Positions 15,487-53,563 of a stretch of DNA of 64,000 nucleotides are shown one piece after another. A program made the translations under genes and the position numbers. The stretch comes from Heptranchias perlo (lineage: Eukaryota): positions 10,292,001 to 10,356,000 of the forward strand of contig NC_090366.1 in the NCBI RefSeq assembly GCF_035084215.1, written 5' to 3'. How positions within the stretch are numbered: the stretch's first letter is position 1; each line of letters opens with the position of its first letter. Under the pieces are notes generated by a model. It was not told where the DNA came from and did no database searches. It was given only the letters and a program-made list of their open reading frames with translations.

Positions 15487-15529
15487 ATGAAGAGTATTAA
15501 GTTTATTCTCATTCTTATAATTAGCAAAG
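15487..15529 (+). CDS. Siglec-like gene A exon 1: signal peptide MKSIKFILILIISK
   Basis: ATG, hydrophobic stretch and AAG|GTAAC donor; phase 1 joins the V exon in frame. Confidence 0.8.
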
Positions 15530-15887
15530 GTAACATTCATTTTAATAATTTCAAGATATCTCATCTTGTGGCAAAATAACAAGGTAATTAGTGATAGGCA
15601 TGGTACATGGTTAGTTAGGGATTTGTAAATTCACGAAGTGGGTGTTTAATGTACATTGTATTAGGACTTTTATTCTATATTTTATTAGTATTGATTCAAT
15701 AGTTATGTTTCGTTAGACTTAAATGGATTTTTTTATGGAAGATAAAGAGGTTTAGTGAAAATTTTCCGAGTTTTGATATAATATGTTAGCGGATGTTAAA
15801 GGTTAACGTAATCGTATTTAACAGGACTTTAAGGGGATATTTGAATTGGTGTGTTATTGGGGTGTTTAATTTCTATTTTTTCATCAG

Positions 15888-16268
15888 TTGTCCATAGTTC
15901 ACGATGGTCTGTGGCGATGCCGTGGTTTGTGTCGGCGGAGAGCGGTTCCTGTGCAGAGATCCCGTGTACATTTGATTACCCCGTCTATGGCCGCAATCCA
16001 CGGGGTATGTGGTTGAAAGGCGGTTCTGATCTTCGTACCCGAGGGGTCTCTATTGTCTATGATCCCAGAGGCCCAGGCAATATACACTTTAACTATAGAG
16101 AGCGAGCTGAGTTCTGCGGCGACTTTGCAAAGAAACGCTGTTCCTTACGGATAAAAGATATCAGGAAGAGCGATGAAGGTGAATATTACTTCAGACTGAA
16201 CATCACCAACGTCCAGAATACAACTGAAGGGTACTCTTCCGGAACTTATGCTTCTCTTTCTATTTTAG
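15888..16268 (+). CDS. Gene A exon 2: Siglec-type V-set Ig domain
   Basis: tcatcag| acceptor, ag|gtacgt donor; GSCAEIPCTFDYP, W, CSLRI and DEGEYYFR give the Siglec cysteine pattern and the F-strand Arg. Confidence 0.92.
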
Positions 16269-17394
16269 GTACGTTTTTCCCCATTTTTTTCCTATTGAAG
16301 TTTATATTCCATCTCCTCAGTGGCATTTAACTTAAGTCTAGAATGGAAAGATTTCATGTTAATTCTTGGTTTACATCACAGTCTACAGCGGCAGTGCTGG
16401 TATATTGAAAAATATCCAGATTTGTGTTTTATTTTGGCTTGAACAGAAATTTAGAATTGGCATTCTTAGTAACTTATATAAGCTCCCTCCATTGTTCAGT
16501 TAATAAGTGCAATCCTGGGCGTTGTATAGACCGGCTGGTCAAAATTTGGCCCTTCATGGAAGCAGAAAAATCAGTCAAGGTGTGTCTCTCTGAAAGGAGG
16601 GTAAGTGGACATGTTCAATGTATAGGAAGGGTTTCTTGTATCGAATCACCTGCAGGCCCCCATATCATAGGGGGGGCTCATGTTTTAAAGATTGGCCACT
16701 TGGGAGATCCCAACTGGCTGCCCGTGCCAGCCGAATCAGACCCAGGAAGAGTTATCATCTTAAGGAGAGTAATGGGGCGTTTGAAGTGTCTACACTGTTG
16801 CTACATTCCCTTGGAAGAAATAAATTAATATCAATATGGTGTTCACAAGGTAAGAAGGCTTCATAAGGCGAAAAAATACATTCCAGATGGAAGACACCGA
16901 GAGGTAGATGTGAAGTTCGCTTCCAAGGAGACAGATTGTCCGAAGGTTTTGTACATTCTCCCTTATATTTTCACAGCGCATTGGTCCTAAAAAGTGCATG
17001 AAAACCAACGGCTGGTCATTTAACCAAGTAACCCTATCCAAACAAATTCGTCAAATAGCACATTCGTCACGAAATTACACTATGCCGTTCTGACCTTTGA
17101 ATGCTTAAGTTTAACTGAAATGTTAACCCATTAATAGTAGATGGGGTTAAAGCTCACTAAAAGCTCCTCTATCATGCCACACAGTAATTTTAAGGCCACC
17201 ATCATTACAAAAGGTGGAGTCACAGAAAGCAATTTCCAATCGCCCAAGTATAATTTGCAACCAGTAACTCTGACAAAATATCCGATGACCTGTGAGAGGT
17301 GACAACCCGCTGGGAAACTATTGGAAAGGTAAAACAGCGAAATTTATCCCTTTCTCCCATAAGTAAACAATGCAAGTTCACAATTTGGTTTACT

Positions 17395-17929
17395 CAATTC
17401 CCATCTTCCATCCTCCATAAACTTGAGCTCGTCCAAACCTCTGCTGCCCCCCCGTATCCTAACTCACACTAATTCCCATTCGCCCATCACCCCCTGTGCT
17501 CGCTGACCTACATCGGCTCCCAGTCCAGTATCGCTTTGATTTGAAAATCCTCATCCTTGTTTTCAAATCCCTCCATGGCCCTCGCCCCCTCCCTATCTCT
17601 GTAACCTCCTCCAGCCCTACAACCCTCCGAGATCTCTGCCCTCCTCCAATTCTGATCTCTTGCTCATCCCCGATTTTAATCGCTCCACTTTTGGCGGCCG
17701 TGCCTTCAGCTGCCTGGGCCCTAAGCTCTGGAATTCCCTCCCTAAACCTCTCCGCCTCTCTCTCCTCCTTTAAGACACCCCTTAAAACCTACCTATTTGA
17801 CCAAGCTTTTAGTCACCTGACTTAATATCACCTTATGCGTCAAATGTTGTTTGATAATCGCTCCTGTGAAGCGCCTTGGGAAGTTTTACTACTTTAAAGG
17901 CGCTATATAAATGCAAGTTGTTGTTGTTG
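17395..17929 (+). mobile_element. L2-clade LINE 3' fragment
   Basis: LADLHRLPV..FKSLHG and FKTPLKTYLF motifs; tail GGCGCTATATAAATGCAAGTTGTTGTTG. Confidence 0.85.
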
Positions 17930-18692
17930 GTATATTTCATTTCACAGAGACATTCCCTTGTGCCCACGGGACTGGTACTCAAATAAGTTGTTGAGTTTTT
18001 AATAACCTATGTCTATGCGACCATTAAGGGGATTCACAATTCTGATTTATTTATTGGTTCCAAGCCCATAGCACCAACATTACATTTCTGCTGAAGACTA
18101 TACCTACACACAGGAGTTTTTCAGGACTGGCGCCTGCTTTTTGTTTCCTCCTAAAGTCTTACCTTCAGCATCCGTTTCTTTTCTCCCAGAAGTTTTGCTG
18201 CTGAGTTCTACTGAAGAAGGAAGGGATTTACTGGTCCACAATCAACCCATCTACATTGAATGCTTTACGCCTTTTTAAAAAGATTTTCTCTCTTGCTCTC
18301 CGAAAGGCTCTGACTCGTGCTAGGGATACTTTTCGTGGCTTCTGCATGTGTGAGTTTGGGCAGTCAATGTTGTCAGTCGTTTGAAGTGTGAGATGAGTCA
18401 CTTGTTTTCATCTGACGCACAAGCAGATTCCAGTTGATGCCACTGGAAAGGGAAGAGACTGGAATTTTTGATCTTTCCCCTCTCTGAAGGTCATATTACA
18501 ACAATCCTACCGCGGCATTAAACGAGATCAGCGGACGCTTACACAACAATTAAATCCGCCCCTGACCCATTGGGTAAATTGATCTGATACCGAGCCATTC
18601 GACTAACATGGTGGCCTGAATCGCCTTGCAAACCACTCACCATTTTTCAAATTGAAATCCTCTGTAACGCGAATTTCCTTCTATCCTTATAT

Positions 18693-18997
18693 GTAAACCA
18701 CGGCTCTGGGGAATCCGTAGCTGGAAAACCAGCGCATCTGATCTGCTCAGTTACCTACAGTTGCCCGTCCGCCAAACTTGAATTGATGTATATTCATGAT
18801 TAAGGTTTTTCTTCCTTTTCTGGCAGAGGTTAAAACTCCCGGAAAAAATGGCAACCGTTTCGAGCGATCCCGGAAGGTTTCATCCACTTGCTCCTTCACC
18901 CCATCACCCGGCCATCATGGGATCAGACTGGGATGTAAATTTATGATCGACGGTGTCGCAGCTACTGTTCAAGAAACTCTAACACTGGACGTTCTAT
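18693..18997 (+). pseudogene. Gene A exon 3: damaged C2-set domain 2; 3' half (18827-18997) potentially still spliceable in frame
   Basis: Ancestral acceptor reads ttatAT instead of AG; GKPAHLICSVTYSCP and SSTCSFTP..LGCKF..LTLDVL lie in different frames; donor t|gtaagt is intact; internal cttttctggcag| acceptor is in phase 1. Confidence 0.75.
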
Positions 18998-19633: not shown

Positions 19634-19915
19634 CGCCAATGACCTCATCTGCTCCACATACATTGCTGAAACCAATCGTCAATTCCTCTATAGTAGCAGT
19701 GGAAGGAAGTTCAGTATTACTGTACTGCACGGCCCAGGGTAAACTACCGGTCAGTTTAAGATGGGTGAGAGATGGTTCGGAGATCAAAATGTCTTCCACC
19801 GGTGAACTGAGGCAGATATTTCACAACATTAGTTCCAAAGATGACGGACAATATTGGTGCGTGGCTGAAAATATCGTGGGCAAAGCAAACAGCTCCACAC
19901 AGATTTCTGTACAAT
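19634..19915 (+). CDS. Gene A exon 4: C2-set Ig domain
   Basis: KPIVNSSIVAVEGSSVLLYC..W..DDGQYWCVAEN; donor t|gtaagt; the AG acceptor at 19632-33 is in phase (start position less certain). Confidence 0.85.
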
Positions 19916-20859: not shown

Positions 20860-21147
20860 ATAAACCTACAATAGTTTCAGGCCCGACCTGCATCAGTTCA
20901 GAGAGTGGGATTCATTGTACCTGCAGTGTCAGAGCCAAACCCCCAACAAATATCACATGGGGCCTCAATGGAAGAAACATCACTAGGTACAGTTCAGATG
21001 GTGAAGTTGTCTCCTGGGCAGTGACTGGTCACCTGGTGCAGAGCTCCCTGATATTGATTCACCCAACTAGAACCAGAAACCAGATCTCATGCGTTGCAGC
21101 AAATGTACACGGCGTTAGTGTCGGTAAATATCAGCACCATTTAGCAG
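20860..21147 (+). CDS. Gene A exon 5: membrane-proximal Ig domain
   Basis: tttgtttag| acceptor, cag|gtaagt donor; KPTIVSGPTC..CTCSVRAKPPTNITW..ISCVAANVHG. Confidence 0.9.
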
Positions 21148-22413
21148 GTAAGTACAGACATTTCCTTCAATTTAATTACTGTAAATGGATTGGTCCATCA
21201 CTGGCCCGTCACTAAGTGTTGGTGTCAGCAAATACCAGCTCCATTCGGCAGTTAAATACCAAATCCATCTGCAATTTAGGACAGACCCATTGGATAATTT
21301 AAGTAGTGTATAGGTATGGTCCGCCATTGAGCACTAACTCATTCAAAGTTTGGATTGGAATAATACATTTTATATTTGCCTGTGATTTGCCGGGTTTGTT
21401 TATTATCGCCTTGTTTTCACCAAGATCGGAAGGGATTCGTATGAAACAGTATAAGTAGCGTGCGATCGTTAATAAAACAGAAGCTTCTGAATTAATTACA
21501 CTCTTTATGAATTCAGGTTTCCTCTCATTATAAAGGCAGCGAGCTCCAGCCTATCATTCAATTAATACATTCTATATTGTTCATATAGTTCAACAAAACA
21601 ACTCTTAGAGCTATTTCAGACTGGCCCTGGGATTGTTGCCCTGGAGATATTCTGAGAAGGCTAATGATTTGGATAATCATGGAATAACTGGGATAATTGA
21701 ATAACCAGATTAGAGACTGAAATGAAATACCGGATAGCAAGCCAATAGACGCTTACGGGCAATGTGAATATTTGAACCCCCTCGGGATTGGAGAATTAAT
21801 TGTTTAATGGGCTTTTTTTCAGTCCTCAATAACATCCATTCAATGTGGATGTCATCCTAGTAATATAAATAACACACCATGTGAGAGGGGTTGTTTGTTG
21901 CTTCGTGACGCGTTGCATTTTACCAAGTGTCCCAGTTGCATTAAAAAGATTCCGAATGTTTTACCGAGGCAGAGGTGTATTCCGTGAATTGTCCGTGTAC
22001 ATTTCTCTTTCCGTGATTTGATATGAACGGAACAGATAGGAATTTCATCTATAAATATTTACTTTAAATTTACACAGGGCACACAGGAGTAAAACGATGG
22101 GGGAAATCCAGTGTCAGTTCATGGAGAGAGTAATCAGTTCAAATGCTGCCCTGTCCATTTTCTGTGAAATCCCAATAAATTAATTAAGCACATTGAGGAT
22201 TTTTAGGGGGATTAGATTTGGGATCATTTTCAAATCCTCTGATCGCTGGGTCAGAGCCCTCAGTTTTAAGAAATGGATAGGAAACCTTAGACTCTTACTT
22301 TTAAGATGTGAATATATAGGAAACTTGCCTATACAGGCGGATTAAAGTTATCCTAATACCATGTTGTAATCTTATAGCAATAACGAACAGTAAAGTCTTT
22401 TTGAATATTTTAG

Positions 22414-22501
22414 GAACATTTCCCTGTAGGAACATTGTCATCTCAGTAGTAGCAGCCGCCACCTTTATCATTCTGATTCTGATCGCGGTGATGGTACGGA
22501 G
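22414..22501 (+). CDS. Gene A exon 6: transmembrane segment
   Basis: ttttag| acceptor, GTFPCRNIVISVVAAATFIILILIAVMVR, ag|gtatgt donor; phase 1 to 2. Confidence 0.85.
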
Positions 22502-22609
22502 GTATGTGTGGCTCATCATTATTTGAACTCTTGTGATAATCACAGATTTGAAAGGGGTCCATGACATCAGGATTCCTGCCTATGAGAAACTATTGTAGTA
22601 AACAATGTC

Positions 22610-23470
22610 GAGAATAGCAACAGACTTCAGGAGGACATGGACAGACTGGTGAAATGGGCAGACACATGACAGATGAAATTCAACGCAGAGAATTGTGAAG
22701 TGATTCCATTTTGGCAGGAAGGATGAGGGGAGGCAAAATAAATTAAATGGTGCAATTTTAAAGGGAATTCAGGGACAGAGAGACCTGGGGATATATATAC
22801 AGAAACATTTGAAGTTGGTCAGGCAAGTTGAGAAGGCAGTTAAAAAAGCATATTGGATCTTAGGCTTTATAAATAGAGGCATAGAGTACAAAAGCAAGGA
22901 AGTTATGCTAATCCTTTATAAAACACTGGTCAGGCTTCATCTGGAGTATTGTGTTCAAATCTGGGCACCGCACTTTAGGAAGGATGTCAAGGCCTTGGAG
23001 AGGGTGCAGAGGAGATTTACCAGAACGGTCCCAGGGATGAGGGACTTCAGTTATGTGGAGAGACTGGAGAATCTGGGATTGTTCTCCTTAGAGCAGAGAA
23101 GGTTAAGGGGAGATTTGATAGAGTTCAAAATCATGAAGGCTTTGGACAGAGTAAATAAGGAGAAGCTGTTTCCAGCAGCAGAAGAGTCGGTAATCAGAGG
23201 GCCCACATTTAAGATGAATGAGGCGACGAGAGGAAACATTTTTTTAACGCAGCGAGTTGTTATGATCTGGAATGCGCTGCCTAAATGGGTGGTGGAAGCA
23301 GATTCAATAGTAATTTCCAAAAAGGAATTGGATGAATACTTGATGGAAAAAAAATTCAGGATTATGGAGAAAGAGCAGGTGAATGGGACTAATTGGATAG
23401 CTTTTTCAAATAGCCGGCACAGGCACGATGGGCCGAATTACCTTCTACTGTGCTGTACCTACTACGATTT
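22610..23470 (+). mobile_element. CR1 LINE 3' fragment
   Basis: ORF with LYKTLVRLHLEYCVQIW..RRLRGDLIE; CR1 tail. Confidence 0.9.
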
Positions 23471-24380
23471 TATTGCTTCAAATAATTAATCCTTGAGAGC
23501 ATTGAACCTGAAACTCAGTTAAGAGTTGTGAAGGGAACAGTTATTGGAGGTCAATTGCTTCCGTAGGTTAAGTGGTAGATTGTCAGAGGGTTATCGTCCC
23601 CTGGCCGGTCAATCGCTTTTCCCCACACCAATAACAGATCAGTAGCTTTCGCTTCCAAGTCAAAAGTTTGTGGGGGGGTTCCAGCCTCAAAACAAAACGT
23701 GAGCACCCACTGTAGCCTGACACTATAATGGAGCGGGGCATTGTGGGCGGTGCCGTTTTTCTGAAAAGGTAGTTGGCCAGTTAACACACTACATAACAGT
23801 CCCGGTTGCAATTTAAAAAACGTTAGGATATTGCAGGAAACTCTTCCGACTGCTCTTTAGGCAACATGTTAAGCCAATATCTGCAAATCTTGTCTATTTA
23901 ACAACGTGTGAACGCACCGCGTGAACTACTTTTCTGCTACTTAATAAGGTGTTAATTTGTCTGCAGTTCAAAGACAGTGTTAATAAACAATAAGACTACC
24001 CCGATATTTAATAGTGTGCACACACTGGATAAATCTCATCTATTTGCTATTCAAACAAATTGTTATCTTAGTGTGCAGAACTCCTGTGATGGTTATTTGA
24101 ACAATTGTTAGCAATCTATCTACAAGTGTGATAAAATACTGATCTTTTCTCCAAGTGCAGACTGCACTAATTCATTAACCAGCTGCATGGGATAGAGAGA
24201 AATCGTTATTCGGAAATATGGAAACGTAAGGATAGAAAGAAACTGGAATGAAATCTCATCTATACTAATCCGGAAATGTTATACACACAAGTCCCTGATG
24301 ACGCAGGGCAACGTAAGATTTATTAGCCTTAATGATAAGCACTTATGTAATTTGCATTACTTGATTTTTTTTTGAATCAG

Positions 24381-24468
24381 GAAGAAGACAAGTGACACCG
24401 TTAATGTCCCCCCAACAAACAGCAATTCAGTGCCTTATGCTGTGGTGCAGCACCCGTTTAACACTGAG
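24381..24468 (+). CDS. Gene A exon 7: cytoplasmic, ITIM-like VPYAVV
   Basis: tttgaatcag| acceptor, RKKTSDTVNVPPTNSNSVPYAVVQHPFNTE, |gtaact donor; phase 2 to 0. Confidence 0.82.
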
Positions 24469-25491
24469 GTAACTGAGGGGGTGGATATTGTTAAGCGTCC
24501 GCTGGAGTTATCTGCCTGATATTTGCTCTGTTTGTAACCAGTGGGTATCACATTCAACGCCTAATCCAATGGTTGAACGGGTGCTATAGAAACTTGTTTG
24601 GTGGATTTTTTTAAGGGTGCAATGGACATCCCATCCTAATAACAGGAAGTGATGCGTTGATCACGTCCTGGTAAATCGGCCATTGACATTTTCCCTGTAG
24701 GGGAAATCAACGTCGGCCGAAGAGAATCGTTTTCCCGTGTCAGTGCACAGTATCGGGAACAATTCTTACGCTCACCTCCCCGTGACATTAGGACCGGTGG
24801 TTTAAAGTCTCAGCATGCTCACACAGTGTGAATGGTCTGAGAAGGGCCAAACCGCATCTGGGATTATCTGCATTTTCCTGCCTGGATTTTATGCCCCCAA
24901 TTTATTGACGACGCCTTGCCATATCCACCCCCCGACTCCCTCCCAAACCCGAATTAAATCATTGTCTGGCCCGCGGGCTGAACCGAATTTTCGTACAGCA
25001 GAAGGCCACTGCTGGTGCTCCGCAGGAATGATCCCCAGCCGTCAGGTAAGGTTTGGCAGGTTGGATGGGGGGCGGTTGCAGGGGGTTAGGGGGAGCCCAC
25101 GGCAAGGGAGCCCCAAGTTTTCCTTATGGAGCCAGAAAGAGCAGTCCTGCCCCGCCTGGCCCACAAGGGAACCTAAATAAAAATTAAAAGCTCTCTGAGC
25201 TTTTCTGGTCACAATTCAGCTCCCGACAGGTTTGGCCTGGTGGCGAAGCCGCCACGTTTCCCCCGCTCAGGCCTTAGGTTAAAATGACGACCGGGCTCCA
25301 ATGACGTCCTTGGAGACCAGTCTGCATATTTAACAAAGATCCCACTTGCCTTGTGATGGGGAAACTTGCCACCTGCAATTTTAAATTACAGGCGGTCAGA
25401 TCCGGGCAGCAAAGTTGAAGGTAAGTCCCTAACTGTATATTACTGCCCTGCCTAGTTTCCGCCAGGAGGGTCAGTTAGAATCGGAGCCTAA

Positions 25492-25670
25492 GGGGTAATT
25501 TTAACCTAACTCGCCAGTAGGAAGCCCACGGGATCGGGTGGAACGCCCGTTTTCAGCCCACCCGATCTTCGTCTCCGTTGACCTAAATAGAGAGTAAATT
25601 CTGGCGGGATGTAAAACTTGCCTCCGATCCCGCCAGTACCCCGATGGTTGGGTTAGGTTCAAATAACCCC
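25492..25670. mobile_element. MITE-like inverted-repeat element
   Basis: Termini GGGGTAATTTTAACCTAAC and GGTTAGGTTCAAATAACCCC; flanks TAA and TTA; internally palindromic. Confidence 0.6.
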
Positions 25671-25904
25671 TTAAATTAGTGTTAGCCTGGCTGAGTTGGC
25701 AGCGCCCACGCTCTGATTCAGAAGATTGTGAGTTGAAACCCCAATCACATTTATGGACCTTCATCGAGAGTGTGATTGGGGAGTAGCACAGAGGAAGTGC
25801 TGCATTCCTGGAGGTGCCGTTTTCCAGATGAGAGCTTAATCCAAGACCCTGGCTGCCTGAACTAGTCATTCAGATGAAGGTTAGAAATCTCATGCACTGT
25901 TACA

Positions 25905-26515
25905 GAGAATTACATAGAATTTACATCACAGAAAAACGCCAATTAACCCCAACCGGACGTTTATGCTCCACATGAGCCTCCTCCCACCCTACTTCATCTC
26001 ACCCTATCACCACATCCTTCTATTCCTTTCTCCCTCATGTGTTTATCCAGCTTCTCCTTAAATGCATCTATGCTATTCGCCTCAACTACTCCTTGTGGTA
26101 ACGAGTTCCACATTCTCACCACTCAAGTCTCTCCTGAATTCCAGATTGAATTTATTAGTTACTATCTTATATTTTTGGCCTCTAGGTTTGGTCTCCCCAC
26201 CAGTGGAAACACCTTCTCTACGTCTACCTTAGCAAACCCCTTCATAATTTTAAAGGCCTCTACTAGGTCACCTCTCAACCTTCTCTTGTCCAGAGAACAG
26301 AGGCCCAGCCTGTTCAGTCTTTGCTGGTAAATATATCCACTCTGTTCTGGTACCATCCTTGTGAATCTTTTTTGCACCTTCTCCAGTGCCTCTATAACCT
26401 TTTTTAAAATATGGAGACCAGAACTGTGCACAGTACTCTGATTGTGGTCTACCCATGGTTCGGTACAAATTTAACATAACTTCTCTGCTTTTCAATTCTA
26501 TTCCCCTCGATAGAA
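25905..26515 (-). mobile_element. CR1 LINE 3' fragment
   Basis: Minus-strand ORFs LEKVQKRFTRMVP and RRLRGDLVEAFK. Confidence 0.88.
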
Positions 26516-26920
26516 TAGGGATTTCTCCACATGTGGTGGTTAAAATTACTCCAATCACCACCAAAATTGGGACTAGTTTAGTGGTATAAACTGGGCGACA
26601 TGGACATGTTGGGCCGAAGGGCCTGTTTCCATGTTGTAAGCTTCTATGAGTCCATGAAAATGGATCGCCAGGTCATTTTACTCATTTGCTTTCACTGTGG
26701 GCAAATTAGCTGATGCCCTTTAAATATAATCCGTTGGTTACAAGGCGCTGTAATGTGGTGCTATGTAAACACCAGATATTTATTGTATTATAACTTAAAA
26801 TACTTTACTCAGTGAATAGGGTTAGGGCAAGAATGATGGAATGAAGCGGGTTGTTATGCTACAGAAAGCGCTCTCTCAGCCGGCAGCAGCTCCATATCTA
26901 ATTCCTACTTTCTGTTACAG

Positions 26921-27088
26921 CGCCAGGGCCACTATGCAACCATGGGTGTTAGAGGGGCTACACCAAAGCAATCAGCTCAAGGAGAAGATGTTCTGTACGC
27001 AGCTGTCAACGTTTCAAACGTTCGCAAACATGAAGGCTATCTCCAGAATGAGGAGTTCAGTGAATACGCCGCAATTAAATTTAAATAA
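26921..27088 (+). CDS. Gene A exon 8 (last): ITIM VLYAAV and distal SEYAAI motif
   Basis: ctttctgttacag| acceptor, RQGHYATM...EDVLYAAVNV...EFSEYAAIKFK*; phase 0; AATAAA at the stop and at ~27358. Confidence 0.85.
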   Translation, partial: RQGHYATMGVRGATPKQSAQGEDVLYAAVNVSNVRKHEGYLQNEEFSEYAAIKFK

Positions 27089-28455: not shown

Positions 28456-28499
28456 TAGCGGTTTGGGAAATGAGAAAATGAGAAGAGGGTTGAGCAAAC

Positions 28500-31400
28500 T
28501 GTATGAGGCTCATCCGATCACTTCACTGTGATCTGTAAAGTAAGATATCAGTTGAGTCTTGACCCCAGCTCCATGGTAGCAGTAATACGGGCCTCTTAGC
28601 TCCTACCGGCAGAATTAGTTTGAACTGATTCTGTTTCTCAATCAAATAGCAAAGGCGACTAATGCTTAATGTGGACAGGTTTCGATTGATTTTCCCGACT
28701 GGATCCAGAATTTTGTTTCAATTGATCAATTTAAATTCACGCAGCTAAAAATATCCATTTTATTTCGAGTATTGACACTCGAATCTAAAAGCTCAAGTCA
28801 CACGCCCCAGATCTAACACTGAATCATAAACGGGGCGTTGTAGCCACTGGGATATTAATGAGTTAATTTTAAACAAATCTCATGTCCCTGAAGTGTGAAA
28901 ATAACCAGTTGAGGTCACTTCTAAAAATGTCAGTTTACCCGTGTGAAACTGTTTTTTGTCAAACACTTATGGACCTTTGACATTTCAGATACGTGTTAAG
29001 CCTCGAACCACTGAACGTGATGAACCTACATGTCTGTGCACAGCGGCTACATAACTAACCACACCATGGCATTCAAAGGGCATTGGCAGCTAAGCAGCTA
29101 AACATGTGGGAGATAAGAGGCTAAAGATTGTGCATAAGCTATTTTAGATATTCAAATCTGAAATGTTAGTTTCTATCCTGTAACTATTTGACTGATGTGC
29201 GGGGCGAGTAACTCTCTGATCGAGAGCCTTTGGCGCTAGGTTGATCTTATCATATCCAGTAACTGTGAGCCACATATAGATGTCCTTCTTATTTGAACGG
29301 GCCGAGAGTGCGAGCAGTTATGGTCACTGGCAGTGAATGAATTTCACAGCTTTGTGAGGCAACACAGTTCACAGTGATTGGTAGGTGCCCACCAGCTGAT
29401 CTCCCGCTACTCGGATTCGATTATAATTGATTTCCAAAATAATCCAGAAACTTGATTAGTCTTAAATCCGACTGAGATAATTGTTTTTAAAAATGTTTAC
29501 ACCGTTAACCGTCCATAGTGATACAGAGTGAAGTTTGTTTCTCTCATCCTGATATTTAACGAAGGTAATGTGTCCTTTTTAATCGTTTCTGCTGGAGGCG
29601 ATTTCCAACTTGTGGAAAACTAAGAAAAAAGAGTTATAGAAATAGTTCATGGTTAGTTAGTGATTCGTAAATTAACGAAGAGGACATTTAATGAATATAA
29701 TATTCGGAACTTAATTCTGATTTAATAGGATTTATTGAATACTTAATGGATGCTTTATTGGGTTCCAATGGAAATTTTAATGGAATTTAAAGAGCTTCAG
29801 TGAGGATGTCGTGAATTTTAGTAGTTGATTAAAGAGTAATTTAATAGTATTTAGCCGGAATTGTAGGGAATGTTTTAATTGGTATATTATTGGCGATCTC
29901 AATGGGTGGTTAATTTCTATTTCTTTATCAGTTGTCCATAGTTCAGGGTGGTCTGTGGCGATGCCGTGGTTGTGCAGGCAGTGAACGGTTCATGTGCAGA
30001 GATCCCGTGTACATTTGATTGTCGCGTCTACGGCTGCATTGAACGGGGTATTTGGTTAAAGAGAGATTCTCAACCTCGTACCCGAGAGGTCTGGATTATC
30101 TATCATTCCAGCATTCCATACAATTGGCAATTTAACTATAGAGGGCGAGCTGACTTTGCAAAGAAACAATGCTCCTTGCGAATAAAGTTCACCAGGCAAA
30201 TATTACTTCAGAGTGAAGGTCAAAAACGCCCAGAATACAACAGAATAATACTCTTTCAGATCGCATGTCACTCTTTGCATTTGAGGTCAGTTTTGTTTAT
30301 TCCTTTTGTACTTGCTGTTCCATCTCCTTAGTGTCATTTAACCTAAGCGTAGACTGGAAAGATGTAAACTTCTGTCATACATCACTGGCTACAGCGGCAC
30401 GGCGGGTGCATTGAATATACCCAGCTGTGTTGTTATGTTTTGACTTCAACAGTAGTATGATCACCTCTAACCACCTGGTCTCGCCACCTCCCCTAGCATT
30501 CAACGGCATTACCATCGCCGAATCCCCCACCATCAACATCCTGGGGGTCACCATTGACCAGAAACTTAATTGGACCAGCCATATAAATACTGTGACTGCA
30601 AGAGCAGGTCAGAGACTCGGTATTCTGTGGAGAGAGACTCACCTCCTGACTCCCCAAAGCCTTTCCACCATCTACAAGGCACAAGTCAAGAGTGTGATGG
30701 AATACTCTCCACTTGCCTGGATGAGTGCAGCTCCAACAACACTCAAGAAGCTCGACACCATCCAGGACAAAGCAGCCCGCTTGATTGGCACCCCATCCAC
30801 CACCCTAAACATTCACTCCCTTCACCACCGGCGCACTGTGGCTGCAGTGTGTACCATCCACAGGATGCACTGCAGCAACTCGCCAAGGCTTCTTCAACAG
30901 CACCTCCCAAACCCGCGACCTCTACCACCTGGAAGGACAAGGGCAGCAGGTACATGGGAACAACACCACCTGCACGTTCCCCTCCAAGTCACACACCATC
31001 CCGACTTGGAAATATATCGCCGTTCCTTCATCGTCGCTGGGTCAAAATCCTGGAACTCCCTTCCTAACAGCACTGTGGGAGAACCGTCACCACACGGACT
31101 GCAGGCGTTCAAGAAGGCGGCTCACCACCACCTTCTCAAGGGCAATTAGGGATGGGCAATAAATACTGGCCTCGCCAGCGACGCCCATTCGCCCCATGAA
31201 CGAATAAAATATATATATATCATAGGCTCGTAAAGATTGGCTAATTGGGAGTACCCATTGGCTGCCCGTACACGCGGAATCAGACCACCGTCATCATCTA
31301 AAGAAAGTTATTGATGTGGAACTCGCTAGGCAAGAAGAAGACTTTATAGCGCTTACAAAATACAACCCAGGTAGAGGACACATACAGATAGATATGAACT

Positions 31401-34450: not shown

Positions 34451-34624
34451 TCAACTATGTTTAATATCTTCATAGAGACTCGTCTCTTTGTCATGTACAT
34501 ATCCATGCCCTTGAGGATTGGTTGAAAAGTGCACAGTGTGGTAATTAATTTCTTCGATCTGCTGAGTCGAATTGGATATCAGTTCCCCGACGTCACTGTC
34601 TGGATCATTCTCACAACCTTCTCT
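34451..34624 (-). CDS. Siglec-like gene C last exon: ITIM INYHTV and distal SLYEDI
   Basis: gtgttgcag| acceptor, REGCENDPDSDV...EEINYHTVHF...ETSLYEDIKHS*; phase 0. Confidence 0.82.
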   Translation of the reverse strand, partial: REGCENDPDSDVGELISNSTQQIEEINYHTVHFSTNPQGHGYVHDKETSLYEDIKHS

Positions 34625-36470: not shown

Positions 36471-36558
36471 CTTCTCGGGCCGCGAAAACCGTGCAATAAC
36501 GTCCGTTGTATCATCATCGTCCAATATCGTGCGTCGAGAGACTTTCTTTCGTTTGTTC
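36471..36558 (-). CDS. Gene C cytoplasmic exon 1
   Basis: ttttagcag| acceptor (NAGNAG), KNKRKKVSRRTILDDDDTTDVIARFSRPEK, |gtaatt donor; 88 nt, the same size as gene A exon 7. Confidence 0.78.
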
Positions 36559-38064: not shown

Positions 38065-38158
38065 TTCCTGAACATCCTGGTCACAAATATGGCTACAAGG
38101 ATAATGATAATCACGGCTGCTGCTCCGATTCCTAGGTTCAATTTCCAAAATGATCTTC
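38065..38158 (-). CDS. Gene C transmembrane exon
   Basis: ctttag| acceptor, GRSFWKLNLGIGAAAVIIIILVAIFVTRMFR, aa|gtaagt donor. Confidence 0.87.
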
Positions 38159-39523: not shown

Positions 39524-39814
39524 CCGTTAAATAGAGCTGATACTTGGAGAAAGTGACACCGTGCTTGTTTGTTCCAATACAGGAGACATTATGGTCAAGT
39601 TCCAGTTCCTTGCTCAGTGTCAATGTGCTTAGCATTAGGTTGCTGTCCAATGCTGAAGAAATGACCCCAACACCTGTGCTGTTCCCCGTGACGTTGCTGC
39701 CATCCAGCCTCCATGTAACGTGCTGCATTGGTGGGTTGGCCTTCACTGTACACACACAGTTCATTCCATTTTGAGTTCTGGCGCAGTTAGGTGGTTCTAC
39801 TATCCTCGGGGGAT
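39524..39814 (-). CDS. Gene C Ig domain 6 (membrane-proximal)
   Basis: PPRIVEPPNC..CVCTVKANP..W..VSCIGTNKHG; AG/GT borders, phase 1-1. Confidence 0.9.
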
Positions 39815-40354: not shown

Positions 40355-40612
40355 ATTCTACAGAAATCTGTGTGTAACTGTTTGCTGTGCCCAGGTTATT
40401 TTCAGCCACGCACCAATATTGTCCATCATCTTTCAAACTAATATTATGAAATATCTCTTTCAGTTCACTGGTGGAAGGCGTGCTGATCACTTCGCCATTT
40501 CTCATCCACCTTACACTGACCGGTGGGTTTCCCTCTGCCTTGCAATATATATACAATGAGCTTCCTTCCAGCGCTACTATAGAAGAATTGACCACTGGTT
40601 TCCGTGGTGCAT
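40355..40612 (-). CDS. Gene C Ig domain 5 (C2)
   Basis: APRKPVVNSSIVALEGSSLYIYC..DDGQYWCVAENNLG; phase 1-1. Confidence 0.92.
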
Positions 40613-41835: not shown

Positions 41836-42096
41836 ATTCTACAGTGATGTACATCCAGCTCTTTGCGGTGCCATGTTTATTGCTTGCCTCACACTGGTAT
41901 TCTCCATCATCCTCATATTTTATGTCAGGAAAGTTCTTCGTTAGCACATTGTTTGAATAGGAGCTGTTAATCGGTTCACCGTCTTTCATCCATTGTAAAT
42001 GAGACTCTGGTTTACTGCGTGTGATGCAGTATATGAACACGGAACCACCCTCCCTTACTGTCAATGAGCAATTAACCATTGGTTTTGAAGGTGGAT
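41836..42096 (-). CDS. Gene C Ig domain 4 (C2)
   Basis: PPSKPMVN..VFIYC..W..DDGEYQCEASNKHG; phase 1-1. Confidence 0.92.
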
Positions 42097-44930: not shown

Positions 44931-45191
44931 ATTCAACAGTAATGTTTATGGAGCTGACAGCAAACCCGTGTTTATTTGTAGCATTGCAGAAATACTGCCC
45001 TTCGTTCTCAAATGTAATGTTGGAAAATTCTGTCTTCAAAATATTGTTTGAAGACGTGTCGCTGACAATTGCACCGTCCTTTATCCATCCTAAGCTGGAC
45101 TCTGGGTTACTTTGTGTTGAACAGAGAATGAATGCAGGTCTGCCCAACAGTATCACCGATGTGGAATTGGCCACAGGCTCGGTTGGTGGGT
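44931..45191 (-). CDS. Gene C Ig domain 3 (C2)
   Basis: ttgcag| acceptor, YPPTEPVANS..FILC..W..NEGQYFCNATNKHG, t|gtgagt donor. Confidence 0.92.
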
Positions 45192-47613: not shown

Positions 47614-47937
47614 ACTGGACGTCCAATGTAATCATTTCTTGAACCCCGTGTGGGTGTCCTCCAAGCTGAATCTCACAGCCAATCATTTTACGGTCATGCT
47701 GACGCAAGGCTGTAAATATTAGCACAGAGGAAACTTTCTGTGATCCTTTCCAAACCGGATTGTCGAAACCCCTGTCGATGTCTTTACGTTCAGTGGTCAA
47801 ATTCGCAGCAGTCAATTCGCTGACCATAATCCATTTTAGATCAATTCTGGCATCAGGGCAACTGTGAACCAGCGAACACGTTACGCTCGCTGCTTGTCCA
47901 GCAGTGATTTCTTCGGACACTGATATACTGGGCTTCT
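47614..47937 (-). CDS. Gene C Ig domain 2 (Siglec-type C2 with CxxxHSCP)
   Basis: cttatag| acceptor, EKPSISVSEEITAGQAASVTCSLVHSCP..W..IGCEI..ITLDVQ, t|gtaagt donor. Confidence 0.92.
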
Positions 47938-50205: not shown

Positions 50206-50253
50206 TTTAAATTGAAAACAGCACTGAGTGAAAAGTAAGAAATGAAAACTCAC

Positions 50254-50607
50254 CAAAAACGGAAAGAAAGACGGGATCAGAGCGATGCCTTTTGCCGTCG
50301 AATGTTGCTGTGACGTAATATTCACCCCGATCTTCATTGCTGACGGGATGTATCCAAAAGGAGCATCCCATTGAATTTTGGATCATCAACCCACTGCGAT
50401 GTCGATATGCAGGGTCAACTGACTCTCGTCGTCTCGAATTGAAGAGGGTGGTGACTCCTGGTTCATTGGGGTTAAACCCTCCCTTTAACCACATCCAATT
50501 CATTCCAACCAATGAATGACCAGTGGTACAAGGAATCACCACACAGGAACCAACCAACACTGAGAGTTGTTTTGGCACCTGCACTGACCATTGTCCAATA
50601 AGAGCGG
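50254..50607 (-). CDS. Gene C V-set Ig domain (Siglec cysteine pattern, no F-strand Arg)
   Basis: ttctacag| acceptor, AALIGQWSVQVP..GSCVVIPC..W..GCSF..EDRGEYYVT..LSVF, g|gtgagt donor. Confidence 0.9.
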
Positions 50608-51596
50608 CTGTAGAAACAAATGAGAGTCGTTAAAAGATTTAAAGGATAGATGTCAAACTCACCACTCAGGGCGGAAAACTGGCGCCGTGTGTCGTCCACC
50701 CCTTGTAGAAACCGGCCGATTTTAATTTCCATTAGAAATGAAAATCAGGTGCTTTCTCTCACAGGCAGCAAATCCGCAACGCTATTTTCATGCCCCGGCA
50801 CAAGATGAAATTCGACCCCCCTGTTCTTTATGTTAAATGTAATTATATTTTAAAAAATCCTGGGCATGAATGGCATTAAATGAAAGAGAGTGAATCACCC
50901 TCTAGGAGGCTTCCGATTTGTTTTTAAAATGGCGGTTTGAACAAATACTTGCAAGACCTTTAAGGTAGAAAAACATCACAGACGTGGGGGTCAATTTTCA
51001 ACTGGCTCTTTCTTCGCCTTGTGCATTCACCCCTCTCTCTCGCTCTCCCTCAGAGGCGATCATTTTAATTTTGAGCCATGGTGTAAATCTGTTGATATCG
51101 GAAGGACCGATTTCCATTGATCTCAATGTGATGGTGAGTTGGATCGAATCAAAGGTCACATAAAGGTCTCGGAGGACCAGGGGGAACAATGCATCATGAC
51201 ATGTCAATTGCGAGTGTTTAGGGCCATTTTTATGTTGTGGGGGGTGAGGGGAGGGGAATTGAAACAGGAACATACTGTAGAACAATTACAACTTGGTAAA
51301 GCAGCAATTGGGAATGAATTATCGTTGTGTGATCTCTCAGGTCCTGTAAAGTGTTAATTAACTTTGCTGAACATATTCTATCTTGAACTTAATAATAGCT
51401 AACTTATCAAAGAACTCTTTCAGAGAATTTGGCTTGTGTTAGTTCCAACATTAGAAATCTCCACTCTTTTTTGAGGATGTTGTTGTAACACAATGAAAGC
51501 AGGATACCTCCTCTCCCTCAAGACAAGGTAAGCCTTGGCGTTTGGCCAACCCGATTAATGTAGATTGCACATTCGTTTTAAAAGGAATAGGAGAAG

Positions 51597-53002
51597 ACCT
51601 GTCCTCAAAAAGCAGAACAAATCCAATCCGGCCAATTACCGCCCCATCAGTCTACTCTCAATCATCAGCAAAGTGATGGAAGGTGTCATCGACAGTGCTA
51701 TCAAGCGGCACTTACTCACCAATAACCTGCTCACCGATGCTCAGTTTGGGTTCTGCCAGGACCACTCGGCTCCAGACCTCATTACAGCCTTGGTCCAAAC
51801 ATGGACAAAAGAGCTGAATTCCAGAGGTGAGGTGAGAGTGACTGCCCATGACATCAAGGCAGCATTTGACCGAGTGTGGCACCAAGAAGCCCGAGTAAAA
51901 TTGAAGTCAATGGGAATTAGGGGGAAAACCCTCCAGTGGCTGAAGTCATACCTCGCTCAAAAGAAGATGGTAGTGGTTGTTGGAGGCCAATCATCTCAGC
52001 CCCAGGACATTGCTGCAGGAGTTCCTCAGGGCAGTGTCCTAGGCCGAACTATCGTCAGCTGCTTCATCAATGACCTTCCCTCCATCATAAGGTCAGAAAT
52101 GGGGATGTTCACTGATGATTGCACAATGTTCAGTTCCATTCGAAACCTCTCAAATAATGAAGCAGTCCGAGCCTGCATGCAGCAAGACCTGGACAACATC
52201 CAGGCTTGGGTTCATAAGTGGCAAGTAACATTCGCGCCAGATAAGTGCCAGGCAATGACCATCTCCAGCAAGAGAGAGTCCAACCACCTCCCCTTGACAT
52301 TCAACGGCAATACCATTGCCGAATTCCCCACCATCAACATCCTGGTTGTCACCATTGACCGGAATCTTAACTGGACCAGCCATACTGTGGCTGCAAGAGC
52401 AGGTCAGAGGCTGGGTATTCTGCGGCGAGTGACTCACCTCCTGACTCCACAAAGCCTTTCCACCATCTACAAGGCACAAGTCAGGAGTGTGATGGAATAC
52501 TCTCCACTTGTCTGGATGAGTGCAGCTCCAACAACACTCAAGAAGCTCGACACCATCCAGGACAAAGCAGCCCGCTTGATTGGCACCCCATCCACCAACC
52601 TAAACATTCACTCCCTTCACCACCGGCGCACTGTGGCTGCAGTGTGTACCATCCACAGGATGCACTGCAGCAACTCGCCAAGGCTTCTTCAACAGCACCT
52701 CCCAAACCCACGACCTCTACCACCTAGGACAAGGACAGCAGGCACATGGGAACAACACCACCTGCACGTTCCCCCCCAAGTCACATACCATCCCGACTTG
52801 GAAATATATTGCCGTTCCTTCATGGTCGCAAGGTCAAAATCCTGGAACTCCCTTCCCAACAGCACTGTGGGAGAACCTTCACCATACGGATGCAGCGGTT
52901 GAAGAAGGCGGCTCACCACCACCTTCTCAAGGGCAGTTAGGGATGGGCAATAAATGGCGGCCTCGCCAGGGACGCCCACATCTCATGAACGAATAAAAAA
53001 AA
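51597..53002 (+). mobile_element. LINE family B RT fragment (young, 5'-truncated)
   Basis: 445-aa ORF with NYRPISLL, DIKAAFDRVWH, GVPQGSVLG and FTDD; poly-A tail. Confidence 0.93.
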
Positions 53003-53514
53003 CTGACGGCGGGGATTAGCGTGGCAGACCCGAGTAGGATTGTCACCCACATGGTAATGGATGGAGGAGGCATTTACTGACTGTCGTGAAAGAGAGGATA
53101 TTTAAATATGTTAATGCTGTCGATAGAACCTCTACTTAGAGTCTTTCTACAAACTCCGCTCCCTCTGCCAAATATTGAAAACCAGTGGGCGGGGCCTGGC
53201 AAGGAGGCACTCGGCCGGAGATTAGTGCGGAAAGCAACGGGCAGAACGGCCCAGGCGCTAGTTTAATCTAATATCTAAAGGACCAACTGGGAGTGGGTGT
53301 TGGGCGGAGGCCACATGCTGCCCAGCAGCACTGGAGCAAATTCCCACCGACCCCCAATCCCCTGATCTGCCGAAAAATAAGCGGGGCGTGGGTGGACGTG
53401 CGTGTAGAAAGCTCCAGCCCGGCATCTGTAAGCTGACTGGGTTTCCCTCCACTATATCAAGTCGCATTACTTCAACTCTGGTGGATTTAGTGAAGAAAAA
53501 AATACATAACGTAC

Positions 53515-53563
53515 CTTCGATAAACCGCAGGGCAACGAGGAAGAAAAATGCAAAGCACTTCAT
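53515..53563 (-). CDS. Gene C signal-peptide exon MKCFAFFFLVALRFIE
   Basis: ATG, hydrophobic core and GAAG|GTACGT donor; phase 1 fits the V exon. Confidence 0.8.

What the first reader, a model, noticed from the sequence alone, without database searches (positions are those of the whole stretch)
15487..53563. Convergent pair of inhibitory Siglec-like receptors plus a pseudogene: a birth-and-death cluster in a probable shark
Seen: gene A (+, 8 exons, ~502 aa if spliced as modelled) and gene C (-, 10 exons, 717 aa) lie tail to tail with pseudogene B between them. Both have Siglec V-set cysteine patterns, uncharged TMs, an 88-nt first cytoplasmic exon, and a last exon with an ITIM plus a distal motif (VLYAAV/SEYAAI in A; INYHTV/SLYEDI in C). 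Known: proximal ITIM plus distal ITIM-like motif is the architecture of mammalian CD33-related Siglecs, which also evolve in clusters with inversions and pseudogenes. Inference: this is a lineage-specific chondrichthyan expansion rather than simple CD22/MAG orthologues.
Basis: partly seen in the sequence, partly recalled or inferred. Interest (0 to 1): 0.8.

Follow-up and report, generated by a model that had tools for sequence, protein, structure and literature searches.

The report
Shark Siglec-like inhibitory receptor gene pair
Two tail-to-tail genes of the sevengill shark encode Siglec-type immune receptors with inhibitory tails, one intact and one transcribed with half a domain missing, and they belong to a shark-and-ray family that gene-prediction pipelines have named but the papers I could search do not describe.

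Summary
The exon arithmetic reproduces exactly: gene A has 8 exons and 502 aa, gene C has 10 exons and 717 aa, and every internal splice site is AG/GT.

The window is Heptranchias perlo. Four gene A exon peptides (370 aa) are exact substrings of NCBI's 'sialic acid-binding Ig-like lectin 5 isoform X2'.

Spliced RNA contigs in 4 of 4 runs (one sample, one study) join A's exons 1 to 5 as modelled. This includes a half exon of domain 2, reached through a new acceptor. A's old acceptor is lost, and the exon's first half carries a stop and a frameshift.

Gene C is intact and lacks the canonical arginine. It has colinear orthologues in Heterodontus (718 aa) and Carcharodon. I have no RNA evidence for gene C.

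B is a decayed 5' copy of an A-like gene.

In a V+d2 tree, A and C's orthologues sit in an elasmobranch-only clade (99/99), apart from bony-vertebrate MAG and shark CD22-like proteins. The deeper branching is unresolved.

The tyrosine-motif tail is shared across Siglec lineages and is not specific to CD33-related Siglecs.

Verdict: a real Siglec-family locus, partly annotated already, and of moderate interest.

The parts
15487..15529 (+). Gene A exon 1 (signal peptide MKSIKFILILIISK, phase 1 donor). NCBI's model starts at the upstream in-frame ATG at 15436.
   Evidence: donor GTAACA. (P0155 residues 1-31 match 15436-15528 at 100%). (joint 15529|15888 in 4 of 4 runs; contigs extend 117-138 nt upstream of 15436).
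15888..16268 (+). Gene A V-set exon. It has the Siglec-type cysteines and the canonical Arg (YYFRL).
   Evidence: Ig_CD22 38.4 bits. (Siglec-7 6.6e-13, Arg aligned). (exact substring of P0155). (spliced at both ends).
18721..18787 (+). Dead first half of gene A's ancestral domain-2 exon. It holds the B-strand Cys and the interdomain Cys, lies in another frame, and is not joined in any listed RNA contig.
   Evidence: frames. (C's acceptor CTTATAG against A's CTTATATG). (comparison with the intact paralogue P0154). (no listed joint uses it).
18827..18997 (+). Gene A 'half domain 2' exon (57 codons). It is entered through a new acceptor inside the old exon.
   Evidence: (joints 16268|18827 and 18997|19634 in 4 of 4 runs). 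(exact in P0155). (AlphaFold pLDDT below 50 for residues 161-181 and 197-223).
19634..19915 (+). Gene A domain 3 (I-set). It is 68% identical to gene C's domain 5.
20860..21147 (+). Gene A domain 4 (membrane-proximal C2-like).
   Evidence: (joint 19915|20860).
22414..22501 (+). Gene A transmembrane exon (88 nt, uncharged). It is skipped in NCBI isoform X2.
   Evidence: (P0155 passes from domain 4 straight to the next exon in a shifted frame). Not covered by my RNA call.
24381..24468 (+). Gene A first cytoplasmic exon (88 nt; VPYAVV).
   Evidence: (55% identity to the tails of P0011 and P0005). (NCBI's model appears to use the same exon boundaries, judged from tblastn coordinates, though in a shifted frame).
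26921..27088 (+). Gene A last exon (VLYAAV, SEYAAI, stop).
28463..30452 (+). Relic B: a decayed copy of an A-like upstream region, exon 1, intron 1 and V exon (V part about 29934-30294). Compared with A it has 1-bp, 12-bp and 14-bp deletions. No further exons were found.
   Evidence: V only. (67% over 2107 nt). (alignment).
53515..53563 (-). Gene C exon 1 (signal peptide MKCFAFFFLVALRFIE).
   Evidence: It resembles the N-terminus of P0159 (sequence shown, compared by eye).
50254..50607 (-). Gene C V-set exon. It has the Siglec cysteine pattern, with Thr in place of the canonical Arg.
   Evidence: Ig_CD22 22.8 bits, below the cut-off. (62% identity to P0159). (clade with P0159 and P0167, support 100).. 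(pLDDT 93; best folds are the sialoadhesin V domain).
47614..47937 (-). Gene C domain 2 (C2-set with the extra Cys, ...TCSLVHSCP...).
   Evidence: (62% identity to P0159). (best solved match is MAG domain 2, E 0.026, both Cys aligned).
44931..45191 (-). Gene C domain 3 (I-set).
   Evidence: 71% identity to P0159.
41836..42096 (-). Gene C domain 4 (I-set).
   Evidence: 75% identity to P0159.
40355..40612 (-). Gene C domain 5 (I-set).
   Evidence: 67% identity to P0159.
39524..39814 (-). Gene C domain 6 (membrane-proximal C2-like).
   Evidence: 70% identity to P0159.
38065..38158 (-). Gene C transmembrane exon (94 nt, uncharged).
36471..36558 (-). Gene C first cytoplasmic exon (88 nt, no tyrosine).
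34451..34624 (-). Gene C last exon (INYHTV, SLYEDI, stop).
   Evidence: (48% identity to the tail of P0159).

Best explanation
This stretch of the Heptranchias perlo genome holds three members of an elasmobranch-only branch of the Siglec family.

Gene C (minus strand) is an intact, conserved gene. It encodes a type I membrane receptor with a Siglec-type V domain, a Siglec-type second domain, three I-set domains and a membrane-proximal domain. It has an uncharged membrane span and a tail with an ITIM and a distal ITIM-like tyrosine motif. Its V domain has Thr where Siglecs carry the sialic-acid-binding Arg. I therefore infer that it either no longer binds sialic acid in the classical way or binds another ligand.

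Gene A (plus strand) keeps the Arg, is transcribed and is spliced. Its second-domain exon has decayed, and the mRNA carries only the exon's second half through a new acceptor. That half is predicted not to fold.

B is the dead 5' end of a further A-like copy.

Inferred mechanism: ligand engagement is followed by phosphorylation of the tail tyrosines by Src-family kinases. SH2-domain phosphatases (SHP-1/2) are then recruited and damp activating signals in the expressing blood cells, as established for ITIM-bearing Siglecs.

Shown here: gene structures, homology, phylogenetic placement, and transcription and splicing of gene A's exons 1-5. Inferred: ligand, cell type, signalling, and expression of gene C.
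For: - Exon models with canonical sites and correct totals.
- A's V domain matches Siglec V domains with the Arg aligned.
- The three Siglec cysteine columns are invariant in all 35 aligned rows, including gene C.
- C's predicted V fold is closest to the sialoadhesin V domain (E 7.9e-10, TM 0.82-0.84). Its domain 2 is closest to MAG and CD22 domain 2, with both Cys aligned.
- A's exons are identical to the NCBI H. perlo protein P0155.
- Spliced contigs in 4 of 4 runs show four GT..AG joints equal to the model.
- Gene C is colinear with P0159 (Heterodontus, 718 aa) at 62-75% identity per Ig domain, and with P0167 (Carcharodon).
- The elasmobranch clade of 23 rows has 99/99 support.
- The tail motifs sit at about -32 and -9 from the C-terminus, as in other Siglec lineages.
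- The half domain has pLDDT below 50 over most of its length, while the flanking domains score about 90.
Against: - I have no RNA evidence for gene C. Reads were laid on gene A.
- One search returned no H. perlo protein matching gene C, so it may be unannotated, modelled differently or silent.
- C's V domain is below Pfam's Ig_CD22 and V-set cut-offs. By sequence it matches antibody light chains about as well as Siglecs. In the fold search MOG, butyrophilin and light-chain V domains score close behind.
- Gene A's mRNA lacks both domain-2 cysteines, so its protein may misfold.
- NCBI's stored isoform of gene A skips the membrane exon and shifts frame.
- The four runs are one sample and one study, and they are labelled RNA only by a guess.
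- No binding or signalling experiment exists.
Confidence: 0.78

Rival explanations
1. Gene A is a transcribed, decaying gene without a working product. The half domain and the unpaired cysteines would prevent folding or export, so the locus holds one working gene (C) and two stages of decay (A and B).
For: - Lost acceptor, stop codon and frameshift in the first half of the domain-2 exon.
- AlphaFold pLDDT 37-58 across the remnant.
- The stored NCBI isoform also skips the membrane exon.
- B shows that A-like copies do die here.
Against: - The reading frame stays open over all 8 exons.
- The V domain, domains 3 and 4 and the tail are well kept, and the Arg is present.
- Two relatives, P0037 and P0153, lack domain 2 altogether yet keep full tails. 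A form without domain 2 is therefore tolerated in this family.
- The transcripts are spliced cleanly.
Confidence: 0.35
2. The whole elasmobranch clade is the cartilaginous-fish counterpart (co-orthologues) of MAG/Siglec-4. On this view it is an expansion of an ancestral ITIM-bearing MAG and not a separate Siglec lineage.
For: - NCBI names many members 'myelin-associated glycoprotein-like'.
- The best non-elasmobranch matches of P0159 are teleost MAG (30% identity, about 1e-62).
- A search with pike MAG listed MAG from ray-finned fishes, lungfish, amphibians, reptiles and marsupials. None of the 120 listed hits (of 144 passing) was a cartilaginous-fish protein.
- The AU test does not reject clade I plus MAG as one clade (p 0.264).
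- Published work reports an ITIM in teleost MAG (PMC7226832, passages read).
Against: - In the free tree the clade is not sister to MAG, and the backbone is unresolved.
- Joins with shark CD22-like proteins (p 0.349) or tetrapod Siglec-10/16-like proteins (p 0.132) are equally unrejected. A second elasmobranch clade joins MAG as well or better (p 0.362).
- Gene C's orthologues alone with MAG are weakly rejected (p 0.030).
- The word-based search can miss distant proteins.
Confidence: 0.3
3. Gene C is not a lectin. It would be an Ig-superfamily inhibitory receptor of Siglec descent that now recognises a protein or other non-sialic ligand.
For: - Thr at the canonical Arg column in gene C and in its Heterodontus orthologue.
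- Only 8 of 23 rows of the clade keep Arg, against 11 of 12 rows outside it.
- Published precedent: Siglecs mutated at this Arg cannot recognise sialic acid (PMC6288428, passages read).
Against: - The Carcharodon orthologue has Arg in that column.
- Other basic residues follow closely in gene C (DGKRHR).
- One abstract I saw reports non-canonical binding by some human Siglecs (PMC12953582, search listing only).
- No binding data exist.
Confidence: 0.4

Closest known systems
Mammalian CD33-related Siglecs
   Same: - Siglec-type V domain followed by a few Ig domains, an uncharged membrane span, and an ITIM plus a distal ITIM-like motif near the C-terminus.
- Clustered genes in mixed orientation with pseudogenes.
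- Frequent loss of the essential Arg (8 of 23 rows keep it; primate precedent in PMC6288428).
- Variable domain number.
   Different: - No mammalian CD33-related sequence was available for the tree. The only proxies were lizard Siglec-10/16-like proteins, which form a separate clade. A join with them is neither supported nor rejected (p 0.132).
- The tail pattern is not specific to this subfamily.
- I-set domains of the kind in A's domain 3 and C's domains 3-5 are prominent here.
MAG (Siglec-4), including the ITIM-bearing MAG of teleosts
   Same: - Best non-elasmobranch sequence match of gene C's orthologue.
- The domain-2 cysteines align.
- Pike MAG carries the same three tail motifs at about -70, -34 and -9.
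- ITIMs in fish MAG have been published (PMC7226832).
   Different: - Bony-vertebrate MAG forms its own clade at 100/99 without any elasmobranch row.
- All four MAG rows aligned keep the Arg, whereas gene C does not.
- Gene C has six Ig domains and gene A three and a half. From memory, MAG has five.
- The shark family is multi-copy: 5 H. perlo proteins, plus gene C.
CD22 (Siglec-2) and shark 'CD22-like' proteins
   Same: - Pfam family Ig_CD22 matches A's V domain.
- The shark CD22-like proteins P0017 and P0018 have the same three-motif tail spacing.
   Different: - The shark CD22-like proteins are about 1270-1280 aa long and form separate clades.
- Human CD22 is a weak match to A's V domain (E 0.016), against 6.6e-13 for Siglec-7.
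Automatic gene models of elasmobranch 'Siglec-5/8/13/14', 'MAG-like', 'Schwann cell myelin protein-like' and 'sialoadhesin-like' proteins (NCBI)
   Same: - Gene A is one of them: P0155, 'sialic acid-binding Ig-like lectin 5 isoform X2'.
- Gene C's orthologues are P0159 and P0167.
- 25 of the 27 hits come from 12 shark and ray species.
   Different: - The names come from best matches and do not reflect orthology.
- No H. perlo model of gene C was returned.

Membership tests
Siglec family (I-type lectins) | N-terminal V-set domain with an intrasheet B-E disulphide instead of the usual B-F pair | tested here: met
   A and C both have Cys in the B strand (..IPC..) and the E strand (..C S L/F..). 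Both have Phe or Val where V domains usually carry the F-strand Cys. These columns are invariant across the 35 rows and align to Siglec-7 for gene A.
Siglec family (I-type lectins) | Extra Cys in the V domain paired with an extra Cys in domain 2 (interdomain disulphide) | tested here: met
   Met for gene C: GSC in the V domain and SCP in domain 2, aligned to MAG domain 2. For gene A the V-domain Cys is present, but its domain-2 partner lies in the dead half exon that is not spliced in. It is therefore not met in gene A's mRNA.
Siglec family (I-type lectins) | Conserved Arg on the F strand that binds the sialic-acid carboxylate | tested here: inconclusive
   Gene A has it (YYFRL, aligned to the Siglec-7 Arg). 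Gene C has Thr.
Siglec family (I-type lectins) | Binding of sialylated glycans | not testable with these tools
   This needs recombinant V-d2-Fc protein on glycan arrays.
Siglec family (I-type lectins) | Significant match to curated Siglec V-domain models or solved Siglec structures | tested here: met
   Gene A: Pfam Ig_CD22 38.4 bits against a cut-off of 27, and Siglec-7 at 6.6e-13. Gene C by sequence is below the cut-off (22.8 bits; CD22 0.048, Siglec-5 0.054). Gene C does match by family tree, and its best fold match is sialoadhesin.
Siglec family (I-type lectins) | Type I membrane protein with ITIM/ITIM-like tail, or a charged membrane span | tested here: met
   Both have uncharged spans. 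A carries VPYAVV, VLYAAV and SEYAAI. C carries INYHTV and SLYEDI. The spacing is shared with other Siglec lineages. The ITIM signature is as given in PMC7226832.
CD33-related Siglec subfamily | Common descent with mammalian CD33-related Siglecs | tested here: inconclusive
   No mammalian CD33-related row was available. The lizard Siglec-10/16-like clade is separate, and a join with it is not rejected (p 0.132).
MAG (Siglec-4) orthologue | Branches inside the MAG clade, one copy per genome | tested here: not met
   The MAG clade (100/99) contains no elasmobranch row. A and C lie in a 23-row elasmobranch clade (99/99). Gene C's orthologues alone with MAG give p 0.030. A sister relation of the whole clade to MAG is not excluded (p 0.264).
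CD22 (Siglec-2) orthologue | Branches with CD22, with a long ectodomain | tested here: not met
   Shark CD22-like proteins of about 1270 aa form other clades. A has 502 aa and C has 717 aa. Two teleost CD22 rows had no V hit or very long branches, so the CD22 reference set is poor.

The most novel reading that the evidence does not exclude
Sharks and rays evolved their own fast-turnover family of inhibitory Siglecs, a functional parallel to mammalian CD33-related Siglecs. It shows repeated loss of the sialic-acid Arg and repeated loss of the second Ig domain. Gene A catches the loss of domain 2 in progress: the mRNA still carries a non-folding half exon between a lectin-competent V domain and the stalk. 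If so, the published view that fish have only the four conserved Siglecs and lack CD33-type inhibitory ones does not hold for cartilaginous fishes.
Probability: 0.45. Interest if true: 0.55.

Novelty: new member of a known kind. Interest (0 to 1): 0.4.

Why it matters
The only paper on fish Siglecs that I could read in part is PMC7226832 (passages). It states that fish regularly have four Siglecs (Siglec-1, CD22, MAG, Siglec-15) and lack CD33-related inhibitory Siglecs. It never mentions sharks or cartilaginous fishes.

This locus shows that elasmobranchs carry a separate, multi-copy Siglec branch with inhibitory tails. The branch shows variable domain number, frequent loss of the lectin arginine, and gene decay. 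That makes the origin of inhibitory Siglec signalling, and the question of whether rapid Siglec turnover is older than mammals, testable in sharks.

The specific new points are these:
- RNA proof that gene A is spliced with a half domain.
- Gene C is a conserved Arg-less six-domain receptor.
- The three-tyrosine tail is shared across Siglec lineages.

The genes are largely present in automatic annotation already, and the same scan has noted many similar clusters in this genome. This window is therefore one example among many.

Tried and rejected
- **A mini-intron to rescue gene A's full domain 2.** The 39-nt gap 18788-18826 has GT..AG, but the phases do not fit and a stop follows. Rejected.
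- **My first TM acceptor for gene A (22429).** It gave a stop. The acceptor at 22413 fits the phase and matches gene C.
- **My first guess for A's first cytoplasmic exon (24196-24312).** Dropped in favour of 24381-24468, which is 88 nt, in phase, and homologous to relatives' tails.
- **More family exons in the window.** The exon peptides found none. Of all 362 stored proteins, one (P0141) hit outside the three known intervals, at 57725-57968. That hit is a transposon-derived tail of the gene model and recurs at 38.4 kb and 23.3 kb.
- **AU test under the mixture model on 74 rows.** It did not finish in two runs. I repeated it on 40 rows with LG+G4. Rows dropped for that set: 34 of the 74, chosen to keep each clade represented.
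- **Rows dropped before the trees.** In one search, proteins whose V hit covered fewer than 85 query positions were left out, leaving 171 of 176. In one search, P0180, P0189 and P0185 had no V hit, and two short rows were kept.
- **Literature searches that found nothing on shark Siglecs of this kind.**
  - siglec + shark: 325 papers, top 20 seen as listing.
  - siglecs + cartilaginous fish + CD22 + evolution: 4 papers.
  - siglec + chondrichthyes: 6 papers.
  - siglec + elasmobranch: 6 papers.
  - The whale shark genome paper only lists Siglecs among Ig families gained in jawed vertebrates (one passage).
- **What I could not read.** Supplements are closed, so Supplementary file 9 of PMC8455134 and Figures S1/S2 of PMC7226832 could hold cartilaginous-fish Siglec data I did not see. 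The 2018 review by Bornhofft et al. and Angata et al. 2004 are not held. What I say about mammalian CD33-related clusters beyond PMC6288428 is recalled.

Full report
**What is there**

The window has no N. Its open reading frames showed two sets of Ig-domain exons on opposite strands. Refining each exon to AG/GT boundaries with matching phases gave the following:
- Gene A (+): 8 exons, 1509 nt, 502 aa.
- Gene C (-): 10 exons, 2154 nt, 717 aa.

Both genes have an 88-nt first cytoplasmic exon that is entered in phase 2 and left in phase 0. Gene A has a third motif, VPYAVV, in its 88-nt exon. Neither hydrophobic membrane stretch has a charged residue.

The exon peptides searched against the whole window found no further family exon except one V-like relic at 29934-30281. 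When all 362 stored proteins were searched, the only hit elsewhere (57725-57968) was a transposon-derived tail of a gene model.

Every search, alignment and fold of window sequence was done exon by exon.

**Organism and existing annotation**

A search of 1.84 billion representative proteins with A's V exon gave 729 proteins at E up to 0.001 and 10 at up to 1e-30. A follow-up search with one of them returned 27 proteins. Of these, 25 come from 12 shark and ray species, under names such as Siglec-5/8/13/14, MAG-like, Schwann cell myelin protein-like and sialoadhesin-like.

One of them is P0155, 'sialic acid-binding Ig-like lectin 5 isoform X2 [Heptranchias perlo]'. It contains A's V, half-domain-2, domain-3 and domain-4 peptides (370 aa) as exact substrings. 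The window is therefore from the sharpnose sevengill shark, order Hexanchiformes, and gene A is already modelled by NCBI. That model starts at an upstream ATG at 15436. This isoform skips the membrane exon and so shifts the frame of the tail.

Five H. perlo family proteins were listed, each seen on a contig of the same length, 15.7 Mb.

**Gene A's second domain**

Compared with gene C and with the close paralogue P0154, whose domain 2 is intact, gene A's domain-2 exon is damaged in three ways:
- It has lost its acceptor.
- It carries a stop codon.
- Its first half is frame-shifted.

A strong new acceptor inside the old exon (18826) opens an in-phase 171-nt exon that encodes only the second half of the domain.

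The four runs that hold this stretch are one sample and one study. They are labelled RNA only by a guess. All four contain contigs that join 15529|15888, 16268|18827, 18997|19634 and 19915|20860. Each joint is GT..AG, and the contigs differ from the window at 0-2 letters. No listed joint uses the dead first half, although 19 joints were not shown.

The half-domain mRNA is therefore real. It lacks the domain-2 B-strand Cys and the Cys that pairs with the V domain.

In an AlphaFold model of P0155 built on a 29-sequence alignment, block-mean pLDDT is as follows:
- V domain: mostly 83-95.
- The remnant: 37-58.
- Domains 3 and 4: about 85-94.

Two relatives, P0037 and P0153, lack domain 2 altogether yet keep full tails.

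**Gene C**

All ten exons are intact. P0159 (Heterodontus francisci, 718 aa) matches gene C colinearly:

| Region | Identity to P0159 |
|---|---|
| V | 62% |
| d2 | 62% |
| d3 | 71% |
| d4 | 75% |
| d5 | 67% |
| d6 | 70% |
| tail | 48% |

P0167 (Carcharodon carcharias, 694 aa) is a second orthologue.

The V domain alone is a weak Siglec match by sequence. Pfam Ig_CD22 scores 22.8 bits against a cut-off of 27, and the best PDB hits are antibody light chains, with CD22 at 0.048. Other evidence ties it to the family:
- It shares the three invariant Siglec cysteine columns.
- It groups with P0159 and P0167 at support 100 in a V-only tree.
- It folds with pLDDT 93.
- Its six best structural matches are sialoadhesin V domains, although MOG, butyrophilin and light-chain V domains follow closely.
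- Domain 2 is closest to MAG and CD22 domain 2, with both cysteines aligned, at weak E-values of 0.026 and 0.19.

At the canonical Arg column gene C has Thr, as does P0159, while P0167 has Arg. Within the clade 8 of 23 rows keep Arg, against 11 of 12 rows outside it.

I have no RNA evidence for gene C, and one search returned no H. perlo protein for it.

**Relic B**

A's 14430-16446 aligns to 28463-30452 at 67% over 2107 nt. This covers the upstream region, exon 1, intron 1, the V exon and the start of intron 2, on the same strand as A. The V exon keeps its splice sites. Compared with A it has 1-bp, 12-bp and 14-bp deletions, which break the frame and remove part of the F strand. Nothing downstream of the V exon survives.

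**Family placement**

I named other clades with three cluster look-ups and obtained MAG references with a third homology search.

A careful tree of V plus domain 2 was built on 74 stored proteins and 235 columns. P0155 stood for gene A, and P0159 and P0167 stood for gene C. It gives an elasmobranch-only clade of 23 rows at 99/99. Within that clade:
- The C-type pair branches first (100/100).
- Gene A sits in a 9-row subclade (89/86) holding sequences from seven shark species, in an order that looks like the species tree. I judged that order by eye.

The A and C lineages are thus both old, and the A/C pair is not a recent duplicate.

Bony-vertebrate MAG (100/99), two shark CD22-like clades, a second elasmobranch 'Siglec-8/12' clade, tetrapod Siglec-10/16-like proteins and short fish Siglec-like proteins are all separate. 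The backbone is unresolved.

AU tests on a 40-row set:

| Grouping forced into one clade | p |
|---|---|
| Clade plus MAG | 0.264 |
| Gene C orthologues alone plus MAG | 0.030 |
| Second elasmobranch clade plus MAG | 0.362 |
| Clade plus shark CD22-like | 0.349 |
| Clade plus Siglec-10/16-like | 0.132 |

No mammalian CD33-related, Siglec-15 or chimaera row was in the trees.

**The tail**

The last 95 residues of 24 stored proteins show tyrosine motifs at about -68, -32 and -9 from the C-terminus. The pattern occurs in the A-type and neighbouring shark subclades, in shark CD22-like proteins, in pike MAG and in lizard Siglec-10/16. Wallaby MAG keeps the -32 motif and a degenerate -9 one.

Gene C and its orthologues keep the last two motifs. 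In the orthologues these sit about 14 residues further from the end, because a C-terminal extension follows them.

The 'ITIM plus distal motif' design is thus an old, family-wide tail and not a mark of CD33-related Siglecs.

**How it most likely works**

By analogy with ITIM-bearing Siglecs, both receptors would recruit SH2-domain phosphatases after tyrosine phosphorylation and damp activation. This mechanism is established knowledge that I recall. The ITIM signature and the inhibitory role are as stated in PMC7226832.

Gene A keeps a lectin-competent V domain on a damaged stalk. Gene C keeps a full ectodomain but lacks the Arg. Published precedent says Arg-mutated primate Siglecs cannot recognise sialic acid (PMC6288428, passages).

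**Known or new**

PMC7226832 (passages) says fish regularly have four Siglecs and lack CD33-related ones, and it has no occurrence of 'shark' or 'cartilaginous'. Four searches found no paper on this shark family. The main review could not be read.

The genes are largely present in automatic annotation, and this scan holds 24 Siglec notes on the same genome (leads only).

Verdict: a real, correctly read locus. It is a new member of a known kind and of moderate interest.

Noticed in passing
window 4673-13528: A 50-bp satellite array of about 8.9 kb, with higher-order periods of 150 and 399 bp and copies about 65% alike, lies just upstream of gene A.
   Followed up: no
window 34630-35793: A 24-bp minisatellite (43 copies, 92% matches) ends within a few bases of the acceptor of gene C's last exon at 34624/34625. 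It gives long spurious ORFs on both strands.
   Followed up: partly
window 17366-17944: A repeat inside gene A's intron 2 has summed contig depths of 10^4 to 3x10^5 in all four RNA runs, with many internal joints. It is probably a highly transcribed dispersed element (SINE-like), not part of the gene.
   Followed up: no
window 51565-52902 (+), 30427-31149 (+), 22809-23489 (+): ORFs that look like reverse-transcriptase/LINE fragments (judged by eye, no Pfam run) lie in gene C's intron 1, right after relic B, and in gene A's intron after the TM exon. Antisense pieces of the same element recur and are read into some gene models, for example the tail of P0141.
   Followed up: partly
window 15926, 16021, 20913: RNA contigs differ from the assembly at three exon positions of gene A: T>C (Phe to Leu), C>G (silent) and C>G (His to Asp). 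The differences are seen in some runs only. They are probably alleles.
   Followed up: partly
window 21148-27098 (gene A isoform): NCBI's stored isoform X2 of gene A skips the 88-nt membrane exon. It reads the two tail exons in another frame up to 27098, predicting a secreted form without ITIMs. My RNA call did not cover this part.
   Followed up: partly
window 54160-54731: A 69-bp tandem repeat, 8.3 copies, 91% matches, lies upstream of gene C's first exon.
   Followed up: no
stored proteins P0003, P0007, P0022, P0178 (not in the window): A second elasmobranch-only Siglec-like clade (100/99), named 'Siglec-8/12/14' by NCBI, mostly keeps the Arg. It can join MAG in the AU test at least as well as the clade of this window.
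   Followed up: partly
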